From contig CM074823.1 in NCBI GenBank assembly GCA_037447605.1, positions 186,001 through 250,000 on the forward strand: DNA of 64,000 bases, given 5' to 3'. Position 1 is the first letter of the stretch. Each line of letters begins with the position of its first letter. A model generated the notes under the pieces. It was not told the DNA's origin, searched no databases, and saw only the letters and a list, made by a program, of their open reading frames with translations. Positions 35,465 through 47,002 of the stretch are shown one piece after another. A program made the position numbers and the translations under genes. Origin of the DNA: Zygnema circumcarinatum SAG 698-1b. Taxonomy: Eukaryota > Plantae > Zygnematophyceae.

Positions 35465-38400
35465 ATGCCACCTGGGGGCTCGAGCGGGCGGCTGGGCCGT
35501 ACGGCTCTGGCCGTGGGACTCTTCATATTCTATGCGGTGCTGCCAGCTGTCAGCTGCGGGGGTGAGCACGGCCGCAACCCGCATGCAGAGGGATCCGTAC
35601 GGCGGGGTTTGAGATTTTTGAAGAGAGAGAGAGAGGGGGGATTATGGGGGGTAAGAAGCGGGTCAGGAAAGGAAGCTGGCTGAGAGAAAGAGAGAGAGAG
35701 AGAGGGAGGGAGTGGGAGTTTGTGCCTGCGAGAAACGCAGAGAGAGAGATAAAGAGAAAGAGAGAGAGAGAGAAAGAGAGGGGGAGGGGAGGGAGGGAGA
35801 GGGGGGGAGAGAGAGAGGAGATAGAGAGAGGGAGAGAGAGAGGGGGCACCTGACTTGAGAGAGAAATAGCAGAAGTCGTCGTGAAAAACTACCAACAACC
35901 ATAAGAATATGTAACTCCTAAAAAAAAAGAGAGGAGGAGGGAGTAAACCCAAAAACCGTGACTTTGTTGACTCCCATGAATACCTTTTTTTTAACTCCGT
36001 TCACTCTGTTGACTTGGTTGACCTGGCTGCGCGTTCCGTACAGTCGCCGCCTTTGACGCGGCCCCCAATCCGGACCTCGCGGACCTCCCGGAGCCGCCCG
36101 CGCCCATCCCCACCTCCATGAAGGGCGGGGCCAACTTGACCCTTCGGAAGCCCACTACGGCAGGTGAGCACGCCACGTGGCAAACGACCATTGGCTACGA
36201 AAGTGACACGTCATTCTAGTCGCCACATGGCAAGCTGCCATTGGTCCAAACATGGACCCACGCACGCCACTATACAAAACTGAACACGGCTCGAACTTCG
36301 AAATCCTAAAACCTTCAAATGATGATTCTGATAACTTCAGAAACCCTACAGAGCCTGAAAGGCCTTGAACCCTACAAACGCCAAATCCTCGAACCCTGAA
36401 CCCTGAACCCTAAAATCTTCAAATGTGGTGCAGATTCGGGGGACATTGACTTTTGCGACGACGAAGACTGCCTGGTGTCGGCGCTACTGGACGAAGTCCC
36501 GCTCATTCTGATCCTCAAGGACCTCCAGCTGAAGGGCGGCCGCCTCCCTGACGTCAACTACAGCGTCACCATCACCGGGGCCTGCCTCGACCCCTGCGAG
36601 ATTCGCGGGGCGGGGAACTCCCAGGTGGGCCCCACACATACGTCATGTGACATCACCATAACATTTGATGACGTCAGCATATTATAGCCAATATACGTCA
36701 TGAGCTTGACACATATATCGTGTGACGGTATCATTTCATTTGATGGCGTCAGCATGCTACGGCCAATTTACATCATGAGCTTGACATCTTGCCATCATCT
36801 CATGCCATGCTATGCCCTACAACCCTAAAAACCCTGATAATATATATCATGCCACTATTCCATACCATGCCTGCCATCATCATATCATCATCGGCTTTCA
36901 TTTCGCCCATGCCTCATGCCTTATGCCATGCTATTCCATCACCATCCCCGATCCATCATACCCTCATAGGCTGTCCATGGCATGCCATGCTCATGCTGCC
37001 CCCCCATGCTATGCCATGCCATGCCGCCCCATGCCATACCATGCTCATGCCATGCCATCCAACCATGCCATGCCATCCCACACCCCAATATATGAAGCTA
37101 GCGCCTAACCAGCAGGGCGTCATCTCCCCCTGCAGATATTCTATGTGGGAACCAAGGGCCGCCTCACCCTCCAAGAGCTCCATATCACAAACGGGCACGC
37201 CATGGAGGGCAGCCATATTGAAGGAGGAGCCATTTACTTGGGGGGTGGAAGCACCCAGGAAGGAGAAGGAGGAGCCTATCTCACAGCTGTAAACGTGAAA
37301 TTCTCTAACAACACAGCCAAGTTCAGAGGAGGAGCCATTTCCGTACAGCCCGACTCGACCGCCTACATTCGGAGCTGCTCCTTCTTCAACAACCGCGCTG
37401 AAGTATGCAGAGACTTCACATGAATGCAATCCCTAAAAACACTCAAAACCTTTAAAAATCCGAAAAACCCGAAAAACCTCTCGATGAAGATTTCGATTGC
37501 ATATTGAGTTCTGAGAACCTTACAAACTGGGCGAGGGGTTTTGGGGGTTTTGCAGCCTGTTATGGATGGGCAAATCTCTATGGGAGGGGCTTTGTATGTG
37601 GGCTCCGGCTCTGCAAGGACCGGCGGGTGCGCGAGCGACAGCTGCGTGACGATTCAGGACTCCGTCTTTGTTCAAAACTTCGCCTCGTTCGGAGGGGCAG
37701 TCTTCGTGGACGACTCGCCCATGGACTGTGACAAGGTGAATAACAAAACTTCCCATGAAAAATTTCAATCTTTCTCTCGCTCTCCCTCTAATCACTTTCT
37801 GTCTCTCTAATCTCTCTCTCTCTAATCTCTCACTCTCTCTCTAATCTCTCACACCTCTCTCTCTCTTTCTAATCACTCTCTACTCCCTCTCTCTCTCTCT
37901 CTCTCTCTCTCGCACTTGACCAAATATAGTAGACATGTGCAGCTAACTCATTAAATACAATTGACTTACATTGAACTCCTTTTTTTTTCGGTTGTTTTTT
38001 TGGAGCAGAATGGCGGCGCGCACGCGGACTTTACCAACGTCCTGTTTTCCAAAAACAGAGCGACTTCGAACGGCGGAGCGGTCGACCTCATGTTCGGGGG
38101 AGGGGGCGCTTCCGGGTCCTTCAAAACTGTCGTTTTCCGCGATAACTCCGCGGGAGTGAGCTTCCCAAACCCTAAACCCTAAACCTTAATTCCATACAAC
38201 CAGAACCAGGAAACTGCAAACCCTAATTCTGCAAACCGTAATTCTGCAAACCGTAATTCTGCAAACTCTAGTATTTTCTGGTTTTGGGGTCTCATACGGA
38301 TTATCTTTTGATACATTTAAGGGTTACAGCATGCGTGCAAAACATGCAGGAAAACCCTAAAGTTGGAAACTGTTTGCAGGAATTTGGAGGAGCTGTTTCC

Positions 38401-44400: not shown

Positions 44401-47002
44401 GACCCGCACCTATCCGGAGCCCATGGCGAGCGATTTGACTTCAAAGGGCGGTCGGGGGAGTCGTACTGCCTCGTCTCCGACACAAACCTTCACATCAATA
44501 TGAGAGTGTTCGAAGTTCCCGGTCACGAAAATATGACTGTAAGAATTTCTTCCTCTCTTCCCCACCCTCTCTCCCTCTCCCCCTCTCTCTGTCTGTCTTC
44601 CCCACCCTCTCTCTCTCTCCCCTCCTCTCGTCTCTCTTCCCCACCCTCTCTCTCTCTCCCCTCCTCTCGTCTCTCTTCCCCACCCACTCTCCCTCTCCCC
44701 CCCTCTCTGTCTGTCTTCCCCACCCTCTCTCCCTCTCCCCCCCCCTCTCTGTCTGTCTTCCCCACCCTCTCTCTCTCTCCCCTCCTCTCGTCTCTCTTCC
44801 CCACCCACTCTCCCTTCCCCACCCACTCTCCCTCTCCCCCCCCCTCTCTGTCTGTCTTCCCCACCCTCTCTCTCTCTCCCCTCCTCTCGTCTCTCTTCCC
44901 CACCCACTCTCCCTCTCCCCCCCCCTCTCTGTCTGTCTTCCCCACCCTCTCTCCCTCTCCCCCCCCCTCTCTGTCTGTCTTCCCCACCCTCTCTCCCTCT
45001 CCCCCCCTCTCTCTGTCTTCCCCACCCTGTCGCCCTCTCCCCCCCTCTCTGTCTCTCGTCCCCACCCTCTCTCCCTCTCCCCCCCTGTCTCTCTGTCTCC
45101 CCCCTCCCCCCTCTCTCTCTCTCTCTCTCTCTCTCTCTCTCTCTCTCTCTCTCTCTCTCTCTCTCTCTCTCTCTCTCTCTCTCTCTCTCTCTCTCTCTCT
45201 CTCTCTCTCTCTCTCTCTCTCTCTCTCTCTCTCTCTCTCTCTCTCTCTCTCTCTCTCTCTCTCTCTCTCTCTCTCTCTCTCTCTCTCTCTCTCTCTCTCT
45301 CTCTCTCTCTCTCTCTCTCTCTCTCTCTCTAACTATCATGCTTTCCATCCCTACGTGGTCTCCCTCTCCCCCCCTCTCTCTGTCTTCCCCACCCTGTCGC
45401 CCTCTCCCCCCCTCTCTGTCTCTCGTCCCCACCCTCTCTCCCTCTCCCCCCCTGTCTCTCTGTCTCCCCCCTCCCCCTCTCTCTCTCTCTCTCTCTCTCT
45501 CTCTCTCTCTCTCTCTCTCTCTCTCTCTCTCTCTCTCTCTCTCTCTCTCTCTCTCTCTCTCTCTCTCTCTCTCTCTCTCTCTCTCTCTCTCCTCTCTCTC
45601 TCTCTCTCTCTCTCTCTCTCTCTCTCTCTCTCTCTCTCTCTCTCTCTCTCTCTCTCTCTCTCTCTCTCTCTCTCTCTCTCTAACTATCATGCTTTCCATC
45701 CCTACGTGGTCTCCCTCTCCCTCTCCCCCTCCCTCTCCCTCTCCCTCTCCCTCTCCCTCTCCCTCTCTCCCTCTCCCCGCAGTACATGGACGAGGTCGGC
45801 GTGCTGTTCGGCCCCTTCAGTCTCATGGTCTCCGCCAACTCCGAAGCGAGTGCGGCCTTTGGAGACATTCACGGGCAGCTTTTGGTCGACGGCCTCGAGC
45901 TGCCCGAGGCGGCGGTCAACATGACTTTGGGGAAAAATTTCAAAATCGAACGGTCCGTACACGAGGTTCGGTTCACAGCTGAAGATGGAAAGACGGACAT
46001 TTCGATCGACATTGTCCGAGCAGCGTTTTGGGGCACACATGGACCCGGAAGGAACTATGTAAGTGTGAAGTAAAAATGCTCTCTCTCTGTGTGTGTGTCT
46101 CTCTCTCTCTCTCTCTCTCTCGCTCTCTCTCTCTCTCTCTCCTCTCTCTTTCTCTGCCTCTCTCTCTCTTTCTCTCTCTCGCTCTCTATTTCTCTCTCTC
46201 TCTCTATTTCTCTCTCTCTCTCGCTCTCTCTCTCTCTGTCTCTCTCTCTGTCTCTCTCTCTGTCTCTCTCTCTGTCCCTCTCTGTCGCTCTCTCTCTCTC
46301 TCTCTCTCTCTCGCTCTCTATTTCTCTCTCTCGCTCTCTATTTCTCTCTCTCGCTCTCTATTTCTCTCTCTCTCTCTATTTCTCTCTCTCTCTCTCTCTC
46401 TCTCTCTCTCTCTCTCTCTCAGATTCTCAGTCGGCCGTTTCTTTTGTTATTTTGTTGTGTGTGCAGCTGAACGTCCGCATTCACGCCCTGAGCGTGTCCC
46501 CCGCGGTTCACGGAATTCTCGGGCAGACCTATCGCCAGACGAACGAAATTTTCGAGCACATCGCCAAAGCGCGCGGGCAGCCGATTGAGAAGCTGGAGAA
46601 AATTTTCGTGGCGGGCAGCGAGGAGGACTACCAGAGCTCGGATGTAATGGCGGCCGACTGCAGCTTCACGCGCTTCCAGGTGAGACTCTGACTGGGAGAG
46701 AAGAAGAAGAAGAAGAAGAAGAAGAAGAAGAAGAAGAGAAGAAGAGAGAAGAAGAGAGAAGAAGAAGAAGAAGAGAGAGAAGAAGAAGAAGAAGAAGAAG
46801 AAGAAGAGAAGAAGAAGAAGAGAGAGAAGAAGAAGAAGAGAGAGAAGAAGAAGAAGAAGAAGAAGAAGAAGAAGAAGAAGAGAGAGAGAGAGGGAGCTTG
46901 GCCTGAGTTGCACGATTGTCCTGTCCTGTTCACTCGCAGGCCGCAACACAACACGTGTCGGCTTCTGACGCATCGCCGTTCAAGGCGGGAGGGAGGCGTT
47001 AG
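35465..47002 (+). CDS. Large secreted chimeric cell-wall glycoprotein: signal peptide + GGA(I/L/V)/FxxN beta-helix repeats + ~1500-aa Ser-Pro extensin-like region + C-terminal Root_cap/LEA-like domain
   Basis: Exons: 35465-35561, 36044-36163, 36434-36624, 37136-37402, 37556-37735, 38009-38155, 38380-38478, 38780-38957, 39172-43810 (internal frameshifts in the repeat), 44379-44538, 45783-46058, 46467-46679, 46940-47002; all splice phases match. N-terminus [33 protein letters not shown]-terminal [34 protein letters not shown] ... [10 protein letters not shown] ... [19 protein letters not shown] matches plant root-cap proteins. Confidence 0.85.
36640..37080. repeat. CCATG(C)-rich intronic satellite
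   Basis: Many CCATGC/CATGCC units in intron 3 of the glycoprotein gene. Confidence 0.85.
46700..46880 (+). repeat. (GAA)n triplet tract with GAGAA interruptions, ~180 bp
   Basis: Seen directly in the last intron of the glycoprotein gene, with GAA on the sense strand. Confidence 0.95.

What the first reader, a model, noticed from the sequence alone, without database searches (positions are those of the whole stretch)
35465..47002. Chimeric secreted wall protein: autotransporter-like beta-helix head + giant extensin stalk + Root_cap tail
One spliced gene (13 phase-consistent exons) joins four modules. These are a signal peptide, six GGA(I/L/V) and six FxxN motifs, ~1500 aa of SP2-4 repeats, and a Root_cap/LEA-type domain. 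The GGA/FxxN pair is the signature of Chlamydia polymorphic-membrane-protein / pectin-lyase-fold beta-helices. In land plants the Root_cap domain is typically preceded by only a short Pro-rich region. I do not know a described family with this full architecture. Inference: a rod-shaped adhesin or mucilage/wall tether with a polysaccharide-binding head, and a possible algal context for the root-cap protein domain.
Basis: partly seen in the sequence, partly recalled or inferred. Interest (0 to 1): 0.75.

Follow-up and report, generated by a model that had tools for sequence, protein, structure and literature searches.

The report
Giant beta-helix, proline-rod, root-cap wall protein gene
A green alga close to land plants has a gene that appears to string a bacterial-adhesin-like head, a roughly half-micrometre proline-rich rod and a plant "root cap" tail into one secreted wall protein. 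The assembled rod breaks the reading frame four times and I found no RNA evidence, so the full protein is likely but unproven.

Summary
All four modules are real.
- **Signal peptide:** present in exon 1.
- **Head:** six GGA(I/L/V) and six FxxN motifs (0.08 and 1.1 expected by shuffling). TIGR01376 passes its cut-off on two exons.
- **Rod:** 4,639-bp Ser-Pro exon with 117 SP4 motifs.
- **Tail:** three exons colinear with the DPH/Root_cap domain (Pfam Root_cap E 2.3e-10).

All 12 introns are GT-AG, and the 13 exons sum to 6,630 nt, in frame.

The rod is not one ORF. The Ser-Pro frame hops at about 40608, 42667, 42720 and 43307. Read straight, it stops at 42140. No intron can fix this. Neither rod nor tail has its own usable ATG or signal peptide.

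One gene with assembly indels is most likely. A pseudogene or a mis-joined assembly remains possible. No transcript or own-protein record was found.

The architecture is a new variant of a known kind. Long chimeric algal extensins, poplar extensin+Root_cap, and an Ancylonema beta-solenoid+root-cap protein are published.

The tail is vWD-like, with the GDPH self-cleavage motif at the rod/tail junction. The scan had already noted this vWD/GDPH reading, and broken rods, on other DNA of this genome.

The joined spliced model was not searched or folded.

The parts
35465..35561 (+). Exon 1: start codon and signal peptide ([32 protein letters not shown]), ends in phase 1, donor GTGAGC
   Evidence: Sequence read; hydrophobicity; splice arithmetic
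36044..36163 (+). Exon 2: acidic Pro/Ala linker (phase 1 to 1). No homologue support; skipping it would also keep the frame
36434..36624 (+). Exon 3: Cys-containing N-terminal cap of the head
   Evidence: no family hit
37136..37402 (+). Exon 4: PMP-type beta-helix rungs (2 GGAI, 2 FxxN)
   Evidence: Chlam_PMP 17.6 bits and Beta_helix E 8e-4; TIGR01376 22.2 bits, above cut-off 15; Atlas neighbours are Chlam_PMP/Beta_helix clusters, 0.95
37556..37735 (+). Exon 5: beta-helix rungs (GGAL, FVQN, GGAV)
   Evidence: Chlam_PMP 15.5 bits; motifs
38009..38155 (+). Exon 6: beta-helix rungs (FSKN, GGAV, FRDN)
   Evidence: Chlam_PMP 19.2 bits; TIGR01376 20.1 bits, above cut-off
38380..38478 (+). Exon 7: beta-helix rung (GGAV, FQNN). 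An in-frame alternative acceptor at 38349 would add 10 codons
38780..38957 (+). Exon 8: last degenerate rung and Cys-rich C-terminal cap (CEGLCSFC), ends in phase 1
39172..40608 (+). Giant exon 9, part A (window frame 2, in frame with exon 8): Cys-rich start ([18 protein letters not shown]), then 60 SP4 motifs; P 70%, S 24%
40609..42667 (+). Exon 9, part B (Ser-Pro code now in frame 0, +1 break at ~40608): 53 SP4 motifs, then more varied Pro-rich sequence and Cys module 1 ([19 protein letters not shown], ~42115-42170). The entry frame has stops at 42140 and 42189 here
42668..43307 (+). Exon 9, parts C and D (frame 2 for 18 codons, then frame 1; -1 breaks at ~42667 and ~42720): 48-59-aa Pro/Ser repeats (EAPxLPPP...[10 protein letters not shown]...[10 protein letters not shown]). 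Both -1 breaks are C-run contractions relative to sister repeats
43308..43810 (+). Exon 9, part E (back in frame 2 after a +1 break at ~43307): (SP)n, Cys module 2 ([20 protein letters not shown]), further Cys pairs, donor GTAAGT, ends in phase 2
44379..44538 (+). Tail exon 1: start of the DPH/Root_cap (vWD-like) domain, with [19 protein letters not shown]
   Evidence: This exon alone hits only FCGBP in the PDB, at its GDPH sites, E 6.8e-9; aligned to homologues
45783..46058 (+). Tail exon 2: middle beta-sandwich part, ends ...GPGRNY
   Evidence: 41-42% identical to Mesotaenium proteins (P0001, P0002), E 1e-11; same exon limits in metagenome loci L001-L003
46467..46679 (+). Tail exon 3: Pfam Root_cap part ([23 protein letters not shown]...DCSFTRFQ)
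   Evidence: PF06830 E 2.3e-10, 40.9 bits against cut-off 27
46940..47002 (+). Putative last exon (20 codons plus TAG). If the GTGAGA donor at 46680 is not used, the frame ends at TGA 46689-46691
   Evidence: the L003 homologue alignment also ends at ...FQ

Best explanation
**What it is.** This is one gene for a very large secreted chimeric hydroxyproline-rich glycoprotein. Its parts, in order:
- a signal peptide;
- a head of about 390 aa, built as a Cys-capped right-handed beta-helix of about seven PMP-type rungs;
- about 1,550 aa of Ser-Pro rod, mostly SP4, without Tyr cross-link motifs, punctuated near its end by two small disulphide modules;
- a C-terminal DPH/Root_cap domain that is a vWD-type beta-sandwich starting with GDPH.

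**The frame breaks.** The four breaks inside the rod are most likely consensus or assembly indels in very low-complexity C-rich DNA.

**Inferred mechanism.**
- The rod is prolyl-hydroxylated and O-arabinosylated or O-galactosylated into a stiff polyproline-II rod. At 0.31 nm per residue it would reach up to about 0.5 um.
- The vWD-like tail fixes or multimerises the protein in the wall or mucilage, and may cut itself at the Asp-Pro bond of GDPH.
- The beta-helix head at the far end binds a ligand or surface.
- Together these would make a wall or mucilage tether or adhesin.

**Shown versus inferred.** The modules, their order, the splice logic and the vWD kinship of the tail are shown. Translation as one chain, glycosylation, cleavage, ligand and localisation are inferred.
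For: - **Splicing:** all 12 introns are GT-AG and the total is 6,630 nt, in frame.
- **Head continuity:** PMP motifs are completed across the e4/e5, e6/e7 and e7/e8 junctions, each phase 0 and at the same place in the repeat.
- **No separate start:** the only ATG plus signal peptide is exon 1. There is no in-frame ATG for the rod or tail, and no AG between 39264 and 41927.
- **Rod/tail junction:** the last rod codon is completed by tail exon 1.
- **Intact tail:** the tail exons are intact and colinear with homologues, and their junctions rebuild conserved motifs such as GPGxN(F/Y)|(L/I)N.
- **Same array across the first break:** the Ser-Pro code downstream of it is as clean as upstream (93% C at codon position 2, A/G at position 3). 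Rod parts A and B share 35% of 30-mers, the 21/36-nt period and codon usage.
- **Nature of the breaks:** both -1 breaks are one-base C-run contractions relative to sister repeats.
- **Other rods in this assembly:** other agents' notes report frame breaks in rods of other genes (leads, not checked here).
- **Rod+tail elsewhere:** environmental relatives L001-L003 also carry a Pro-rich rod directly upstream of the same three tail exons.
- **Tail is vWD-like:**
Against: - As assembled, the reading frame from exon 1 stops at 42140, so the tail is not reached.
- Two of the four breaks (40608, 43307) are not simple homopolymer slips.
- No protein over 44% identical to tail exon 2 exists among 1.84 billion representatives, and two word searches were blank. 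Other agents' notes call other genes of this genome expressed (unchecked leads). The search tools may simply be blind to this gene.
- No homologue with the PMP head on a rod or a root-cap tail was found. The only head relatives are probably prokaryotic: one lies in an uninterrupted 1,839-aa ORF, the others were not resolved; identity 38-41%.
- The published AnIBP runs at its full-length mass, so Asp-Pro cleavage is not universal in this family (PMC10796529).
- The joined protein was not searched or folded.
Confidence: 0.55

Rival explanations
1. The frameshifts are real. Either the locus is a recently dead gene, or its product is truncated: signal peptide, beta-helix head, 478 aa of SP4 rod, then about 510 aa of out-of-frame Ser/Thr/Leu-rich sequence ending at 42140. 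The root-cap exons would then be untranslated relics.
For: - The assembled sequence says exactly this.
- The breaks at 40608 and 43307 involve several bases, not a homopolymer slip.
- No expressed or annotated protein containing the tail exon is in the searched collections.
Against: - About 660 codons of non-repetitive exons and all 24 splice sites are intact.
- The tail keeps its conserved motifs at 32-51% identity to the Mesotaenium homologue P0006, exon by exon.
- The four shifts cancel exactly.
- The Ser-Pro code after the first break shows no decay.
- Rod frame breaks are reported for several other genes of this assembly, which suggests a technical cause (unchecked leads).
Confidence: 0.25
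2. The assembly wrongly joined two different rod-containing genes through their near-identical Ser-Pro repeats. One would be a head+rod gene and the other a rod+root-cap gene. The break at ~40608 would mark the false join.
For: - The break at 40608 lies inside the most repetitive part of the array and is not a homopolymer slip.
- Scan notes suggest this genome has many Ser-Pro rod genes and several root-cap genes with other heads.
- The window is scaffolded, with ten 10-N gaps.
Against: - There is no gap within 35465-47002; the nearest N runs are at 15665 and 51192.
- TRF sees one array across the break.
- The two sides share 19% of 60-mers, the period and the codon usage.
- Three further breaks lie in less repetitive DNA, where a false join is not expected.
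Confidence: 0.12
3. Two independent transcripts come from the locus as assembled: a head(+rod) gene and a separate ordinary root-cap protein gene with its own promoter and start upstream of the GDPH exon.
For: Cys module 2 plus a Pro-rich stretch plus the DPH domain looks like a canonical root-cap protein body: an N-region with Cys pairs, then the DPH domain.
Against: - There is no ATG in the coding frames between 42140 and 43810, and no signal-peptide-like segment.
- The tail's first exon starts in phase 2 and needs the two last bases of the rod exon.
Confidence: 0.03

Closest known systems
Chimeric extensins carrying a Root_cap domain in land plants (poplar PtEXT30, 467 aa, PF06830; listed homologue AtEXT51) - PMC5073881
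   Same: Signal peptide, SPn extensin motifs and a C-terminal Root_cap domain in one secreted protein.
   Different: - The land-plant proteins have about 5 SP3 motifs and no folded head.
- This gene has about 117 SP4 motifs (about 1,550 aa of rod) and a head of about 390 aa with PMP-type beta-helix repeats.
AnIBP of Ancylonema nordenskioeldii: DUF3494 beta-solenoid + DPH/root-cap domain - PMC10796529
   Same: A zygnematophyte secreted protein with a beta-solenoid N-terminal domain and a C-terminal DPH/root-cap domain split by introns.
   Different: - The head family differs: DUF3494 ice-binding there, PMP/FxxN-GGA type here, with no DUF3494 hit.
- AnIBP has no rod; its DPH domain follows the head directly.
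- The authors called AnIBP the only known root-cap protein with a defined N-terminal domain.
Long chimeric extensins / HRGPs of green algae (Liu et al. 2016 as cited in PMC10762512; volvocine pherophorins)
   Same: Globular domain(s) on long Ser-Pro rods, with no Tyr cross-link motifs.
   Different: The particular end domains (PMP-type beta-helix and vWD-like root-cap) were not found described together.
Chlamydial polymorphic membrane proteins and Pmp-like beta-helix proteins of bacteria, archaea and Trichomonas - PMC10715098, PMC11166332
   Same: Paired FxxN and GGA(I/L/V) motifs at about one pair per rung; repeat models match.
   Different: - There is no autotransporter barrel and no Pmp middle domain.
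- The gene is eukaryotic, with introns at the same repeat position.
- It is secreted by a signal peptide into a wall.
vWD domains with GDPH autocleavage (FCGBP, MUC2/MUC5AC, RGM, SUSD2) and inter-alpha-inhibitor heavy-chain C-terminal domain - PMC8267560, PMC10880436
   Same: - The motif GDPH-x5-G-xx-FDF-x-G sits at the start of a beta-sandwich.
- The fold match is to vWD assemblies.
- A heavily O-glycosylated rod sits next to a vWD domain, as in mucins.
   Different: - There are no C8/TIL modules.
- Pfam VWD and ITI_HC_C hits on homologues are below their cut-offs.
- Cleavage has not been shown for any root-cap protein.
Mesostigma viride giant LRR-HYR-DPH proteins (P0010, P0011, P0012; database models only)
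   Same: Very long extracellular multidomain proteins (1,683-2,398 aa) that end in the same DPH/root-cap domain.
   Different: Their N-terminal parts are LRR and HYR domains, with no Ser-Pro rod and no PMP repeats.

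Membership tests
Chimeric extensin (HRGP superfamily) | N-terminal signal peptide | tested here: met
   Basic n-region, 17-residue hydrophobic core (KD means up to 2.55) and a small-residue c-region VSC. No dedicated predictor was available.
Chimeric extensin (HRGP superfamily) | Two or more SP3-SP5 motifs | tested here: met
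   60 SP4 in the uninterrupted part in frame with exon 8; 117 SP4, 14 SP3 and 5 SP5 along the best-frame path.
Chimeric extensin (HRGP superfamily) | Additional non-HRGP domain | tested here: met
   PMP-type repeats and Root_cap.
Classical cross-linking extensin | Tyr cross-link motifs (YxY, VYK) | tested here: not met
   8 Tyr in about 1,546 aa; no YxY and no VYK.
Chimeric extensin (HRGP superfamily) | Hyp formation and O-arabinosylation/galactosylation | not testable with these tools
   Needs biochemistry.
Root cap / DPH-domain proteins (PF06830) | Pfam Root_cap above the gathering score, near the C-terminus | tested here: met
   40.9 bits against 27, E 2.3e-10, on exon 46467-46679.
Root cap / DPH-domain proteins (PF06830) | C-terminal domain of about 280 aa beginning with DPH, colinear with family members | tested here: met
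   Three exons align in order to Mesotaenium and Mesostigma proteins and to L001-L003; GDPH is at the start.
Root cap / DPH-domain proteins (PF06830) | Short (~100 aa) variable N-terminal region with paired Cys after the signal peptide | tested here: not met
   Cys pairs lie just upstream (Cys module 2), but the N-terminal part is about 1,950 aa.
Chlamydial Pmp / type V autotransporter | Repeated FxxN and GGA(I/L/V) motifs, repeat model hit | tested here: met
   6+6 motifs against 1.1 and 0.08 by shuffling. TIGR01376 is above its cut-off on two exons. Pfam Chlam_PMP is below its whole-protein cut-off on each single exon.
Chlamydial Pmp / type V autotransporter | C-terminal autotransporter beta-barrel and Pmp middle domain | tested here: not met
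   No such Pfam or NCBIfam hit on any exon. The C-terminus is rod plus Root_cap.
Pectin-lyase-fold enzymes (Beta_helix PF13229 and relatives) | Family model above cut-off, catalytic residues | tested here: inconclusive
   Beta_helix 19.4 bits against 25.9 on exon 4. A weak PL6 alginate lyase hit, E 0.036. Catalytic residues could not be assessed exon by exon.
vWD domain with GDPH autocleavage | GDPH motif at the start of a vWD-type beta-sandwich | tested here: met
   - The window exon hits only FCGBP, at its GDPH sites, E 6.8e-9; the family profile gives E 1.9e-12.
- The model of homologue P0006 gives 17 of the top 20 VIA-align hits as vWD proteins, Z up to 9.8, and Foldseek's top hits are vWD.
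- Caveat: that model is poor (pLDDT 45; core 74-87).
vWD domain with GDPH autocleavage | Pfam VWD above the gathering score | tested here: not met
   No hit on the window exons. VWD scores 17.5 against 22.9 on P0009, and ITI_HC_C 23.3 against 27 on P0002.
vWD domain with GDPH autocleavage | Actual Asp-Pro cleavage | not testable with these tools
   Needs protein work. AnIBP's full-length gel mass argues against obligatory cleavage.

The most novel reading that the evidence does not exclude
The protein is a plant-lineage counterpart of a tethered mucin. In the acidic wall space, the vWD-like root-cap tail cuts the Asp-Pro bond of GDPH at the rod/tail junction. Two outcomes are possible:
- the ~0.5-um glycosylated rod with its beta-helix head is released into mucilage; or
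- as inter-alpha-inhibitor heavy chains do with chondroitin sulphate, the new C-terminal Asp is passed onto a wall polysaccharide, making a covalent protein-polysaccharide link.

This would give the unexplained root-cap protein family a chemistry.
Probability: 0.12. Interest if true: 0.8.

Novelty: new variant of a known kind. Interest (0 to 1): 0.45.

Why it matters
- **Wall evolution.** The walls and mucilage of the algae closest to land plants are thought to have mattered for the move to land, yet their proteins are poorly known. The review read here states that little is known about where charophyte extensins sit in the wall or what they do.
- **Modular wall proteins.** If real, this gene shows that these algae assemble wall proteins from interchangeable parts: a ligand-binding head, a glycoprotein rod of set length and an anchoring or self-processing tail. 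One of those heads is of a type otherwise known from bacterial and protist adhesins.
- **Root-cap domain function.** The gene places the root-cap domain, abundant in land plants and of unknown function, at the end of a mucin-like rod with an intact GDPH motif. That suggests simple cleavage and anchoring experiments.
- **Annotation warning.** Ser-Pro rods in this assembly can pass exon-phase checks while being broken inside.

Tried and rejected
**Searches for the gene's own protein, transcripts or orthologues**
- Word search on the GDPH exon inside a 691-aa stop-free frame: no candidates.
- Word search on the unique start of exon 9, candidates of 261-831 aa: nothing.
- Word search with the Mesotaenium protein P0006: only itself, candidates saturated.
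- Full HMMER search of 1.84 billion representatives with tail exon 2: 11 hits, best 42% identity, none with a PMP head.
- The look-up of encoding contigs on P0001 and P0002: not on record.

**Head**
- Metagenome scan with exon 4: four loci at 38-41% identity. One lies in an uninterrupted 1,839-aa ORF, so it is bacterial-type; the others were not resolved.
- PDB sequence search: only weak repeat matches.
- DUF3494, as in AnIBP: no hit.

**Ways to rescue the rod frame**
- Introns inside the rod: rejected. There is no AG in 39264-41927, and no consensus-like donor in the exon.
- The alternative acceptor at 39263/4 keeps the same frame (own reading).

**Other**
- Independent start for the tail: rejected, no in-frame ATG.
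- AF2 model of P0006 from an 11-row alignment: poor (pLDDT 45). It was used only for fold ranking.
- Paralogues of any exon elsewhere in the window: none.
The head as a whole therefore has no structure prediction and no whole-protein Pfam score.

Full report
**What is in the sequence**

The region is eukaryotic, with short exons, GT-AG introns full of CT or GAA microsatellites, and a strong C-over-G skew. Scan notes place the genome in a streptophyte, conjugating green alga. The closest database relatives of the tail are Mesotaenium endlicherianum proteins at 41-42% identity.

I rebuilt the gene model by reading the sequence and checked it arithmetically.
- There are 13 exons between the ATG at 35465 and the TAG at 47000-47002.
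- There are twelve GT-AG introns of 153-1,244 nt.
- Boundary phases are consistent, and the total is 6,630 nt (2,209 codons).
Exon 9 starts at 39172. Exon 2 and a longer form of exon 7 are optional in-frame alternatives.

**Head**

- Exon 1 encodes a typical signal peptide.
- Exons 4-7 (231 aa) contain six GGA[ILV] and six FxxN motifs, spaced one pair per rung. Shuffling gives 0.08 and 1.1, and none of 20,000 shuffles reaches both counts.
- Searched exon by exon, Pfam Chlam_PMP gives 17.6, 15.5 and 19.2 bits (whole-protein cut-off 20.6), and Beta_helix gives E 8e-4. NCBIfam TIGR01376 POMP_repeat passes its cut-off on two exons.
- The language-model neighbours of exon 4 are Chlam_PMP/Beta_helix clusters.
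- Three introns (e4/e5, e6/e7, e7/e8) cut the repeat at the same place, between FxxNxA(E/G/Q) and the next GGA, all in phase 0. The motifs are completed across the junctions. This supports the splicing and argues against contamination or a recent transfer.
- There is no autotransporter barrel, so the head is PMP-like in fold, not a Pmp.
- The only head relatives I could reach are four metagenome loci at 38-41% identity. One lies in an uninterrupted 1,839-aa ORF, so it is bacterial-type; the others were not resolved.

**Rod**

Exon 9 (39172-43810) is 63% C and 3% G. A frame-aware scan and direct reading show that the Ser-Pro code changes frame four times:

| Segment | Window frame | Change at its end |
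|---|---|---|
| 39172 to ~40608 | 2 | +1 |
| to ~42667 | 0 | -1 |
| next 18 codons, to ~42720 | 2 | -1 |
| to ~43307 | 1 | +1 |
| to 43810 | 2 | exon end |

- The shifts sum to zero, so a check of exon phases passes.
- Read straight from exon 8, the frame turns into Ser/Thr/Leu-rich sequence and stops at 42140 and 42189.
- No AG occurs between 39264 and 41927, and none of the 49 GTs resembles the gene's donors. Introns cannot explain the shifts.
- Along the best-frame path the rod is 1,546 aa, with 117 SP4, 14 SP3, 18 SP2 and 195 SP motifs, 8 Tyr and no YxY or VYK.
- A small module, SPPPPC-x5-(D/K)NC-x-ISGFP, occurs twice, at ~42115 in frame 0 and ~43605 in frame 2. This shows independently that the true frame differs between those points.

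**Are the breaks real?**

For an artefact:
- Both -1 breaks are one-base C-run contractions relative to sister repeats.
- The code after the first break is undecayed.
- The two sides belong to one array.
- All non-repetitive exons and all splice sites are intact.
- Notes by other agents report broken rods in other genes of this assembly. These are leads I did not check.

Against an artefact:
- Two breaks are multi-base changes.
- I found no independent sequence or transcript.

The searches for independent evidence gave the following.
- The full search of 1.84 billion representatives with tail exon 2 found nothing above 44% identity.
- Word searches aimed at a transcript-sized protein were blank. 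These word searches are length-limited and insensitive, so a blank from them is weak evidence.

**One gene or several?**

- The rod and tail have no ATG in their coding frames and no second signal peptide. Both need the secretory pathway.
- The rod exon ends in phase 2, and tail exon 1 supplies the third base seven codons before GDPH.
- A separate tail gene is therefore very unlikely.
- A false assembly join inside the repeats cannot be excluded. There is no gap in the gene, and the array is homogeneous across the break.

**Tail**

- The three tail exons align in order with the DPH/root-cap domain of Mesotaenium and Mesostigma proteins.
- They also align with three environmental contigs (L001-L003) that have the same exon limits. 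Each of these carries a Thr/Pro/Ala- or Thr/Pro/Ser-rich rod directly upstream, running to the contig end.
- Pfam Root_cap is above its threshold.
- Mesostigma has 1,683-2,398-aa LRR-HYR proteins ending in the same domain. So this domain is a recurrent C-terminal module of large extracellular proteins.

**The tail is vWD-like**

- The window's GDPH exon alone hits only FCGBP in the PDB, at five of its GDPH sites (E 6.8e-9). The family profile gives E 1.9e-12.
- Homologues give sub-threshold Pfam VWD and ITI_HC_C hits.
- A weak AF2 model of the Mesotaenium homologue P0006 ranks vWD assemblies (MUC5B, VWF, MUC2, FCGBP, vitellogenin, RGMB) in 17 of the top 20 places in a Foldseek-independent search, with Z up to 9.8. 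Foldseek also ranks vWD assemblies first.
- GDPH is the autocatalytic Asp-Pro cleavage site of such domains (PMC8267560, PMC10880436).
- The two papers on root-cap proteins do not mention this. No paper in the library pairs 'GDPH' or 'von Willebrand' with root cap proteins.
- After reaching this reading I found that the scan had already noted it for other root-cap genes of this genome, with PAN/apple and Ole e 1 heads. It is not new to the scan.

**Known or new?**

Already published:
- Long chimeric extensins are a recognised feature of green algae (PMC10762512).
- Extensin+Root_cap chimeras are listed for poplar and Arabidopsis (PMC5073881).
- A beta-solenoid+DPH protein exists in Ancylonema. 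Its authors state that N-terminal regions of root-cap proteins are otherwise short and undefined (PMC10796529 and bioRxiv 10.1101/2024.01.29.577848).

The PMP-type head in a streptophyte, the size of the rod and the three-part order were found nowhere. My searches for them were limited, because the spliced model could only be searched exon by exon.

I class it as a new variant of a known kind, conditional on the rod being intact in the organism.

**Left out**

No contig looked human.

Noticed in passing
window 37403-37555, 38156-38379, 38479-38779: Three introns interrupt the PMP-type repeat at the same position (after FxxNxA+1, before the next GGA) and all in phase 0. This suggests the rungs multiplied by exon duplication within the eukaryotic lineage.
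   Followed up: partly
window ~42115-42170 and ~43605-43660: A small Cys module (SPPPPC-x5-(D/K)NC-x-ISGFP) occurs twice in the rod, in different reading frames of the assembly. It may be a disulphide-looped hinge or docking site. It resembles no family that I tested.
   Followed up: partly
window 2901, 3462, 4137, 4568, 8645, 12250, 15665, 51192, 56370, 57745: Ten runs of exactly 10 N, which are scaffold gaps of unknown size. None lies inside the gene.
   Followed up: yes
window 2-310 (+): A stop-free stretch reading LTSFYRRFIKGYALIARPLHALEK... looks like the RT/RNase H junction of a Ty3/gypsy-type retrotransposon. This rests on my own knowledge of such sequences; it was not searched.
   Followed up: no
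window 46690-46890; 43965-44373; 44560-45680; 46080-46420: The tail introns are almost pure microsatellite: GAA/GAG in the last intron and CT/CTCTCC in the others. They stay open in several frames, so ORF callers report long bogus 'SLSLSL' or 'EEEKKK' proteins here.
   Followed up: partly
L001:1-1100, L002:1-900, L003:400-2500: Environmental algal contigs (JGI 3300060284/5) carry the same three root-cap exons behind (TPAPT)n or (GTQTPS)n rods that run to the contig end. A Band_7 gene lies about 2.4 kb downstream in L001 and L002. Mucin-like rod + root-cap tail therefore seems common in relatives.
   Followed up: partly
P0010, P0011, P0012 (Mesostigma viride models): Proteins of 1,683-2,398 aa with LRR repeats and two HYR domains end in a (G/S)DPH root-cap domain. 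I did not find this architecture mentioned in the root-cap papers I read.
   Followed up: partly
window 19738-25081: The scan's index lists a separate first-reader note here (a triple Tudor protein with AT-hook). I did not examine it.
   Followed up: no
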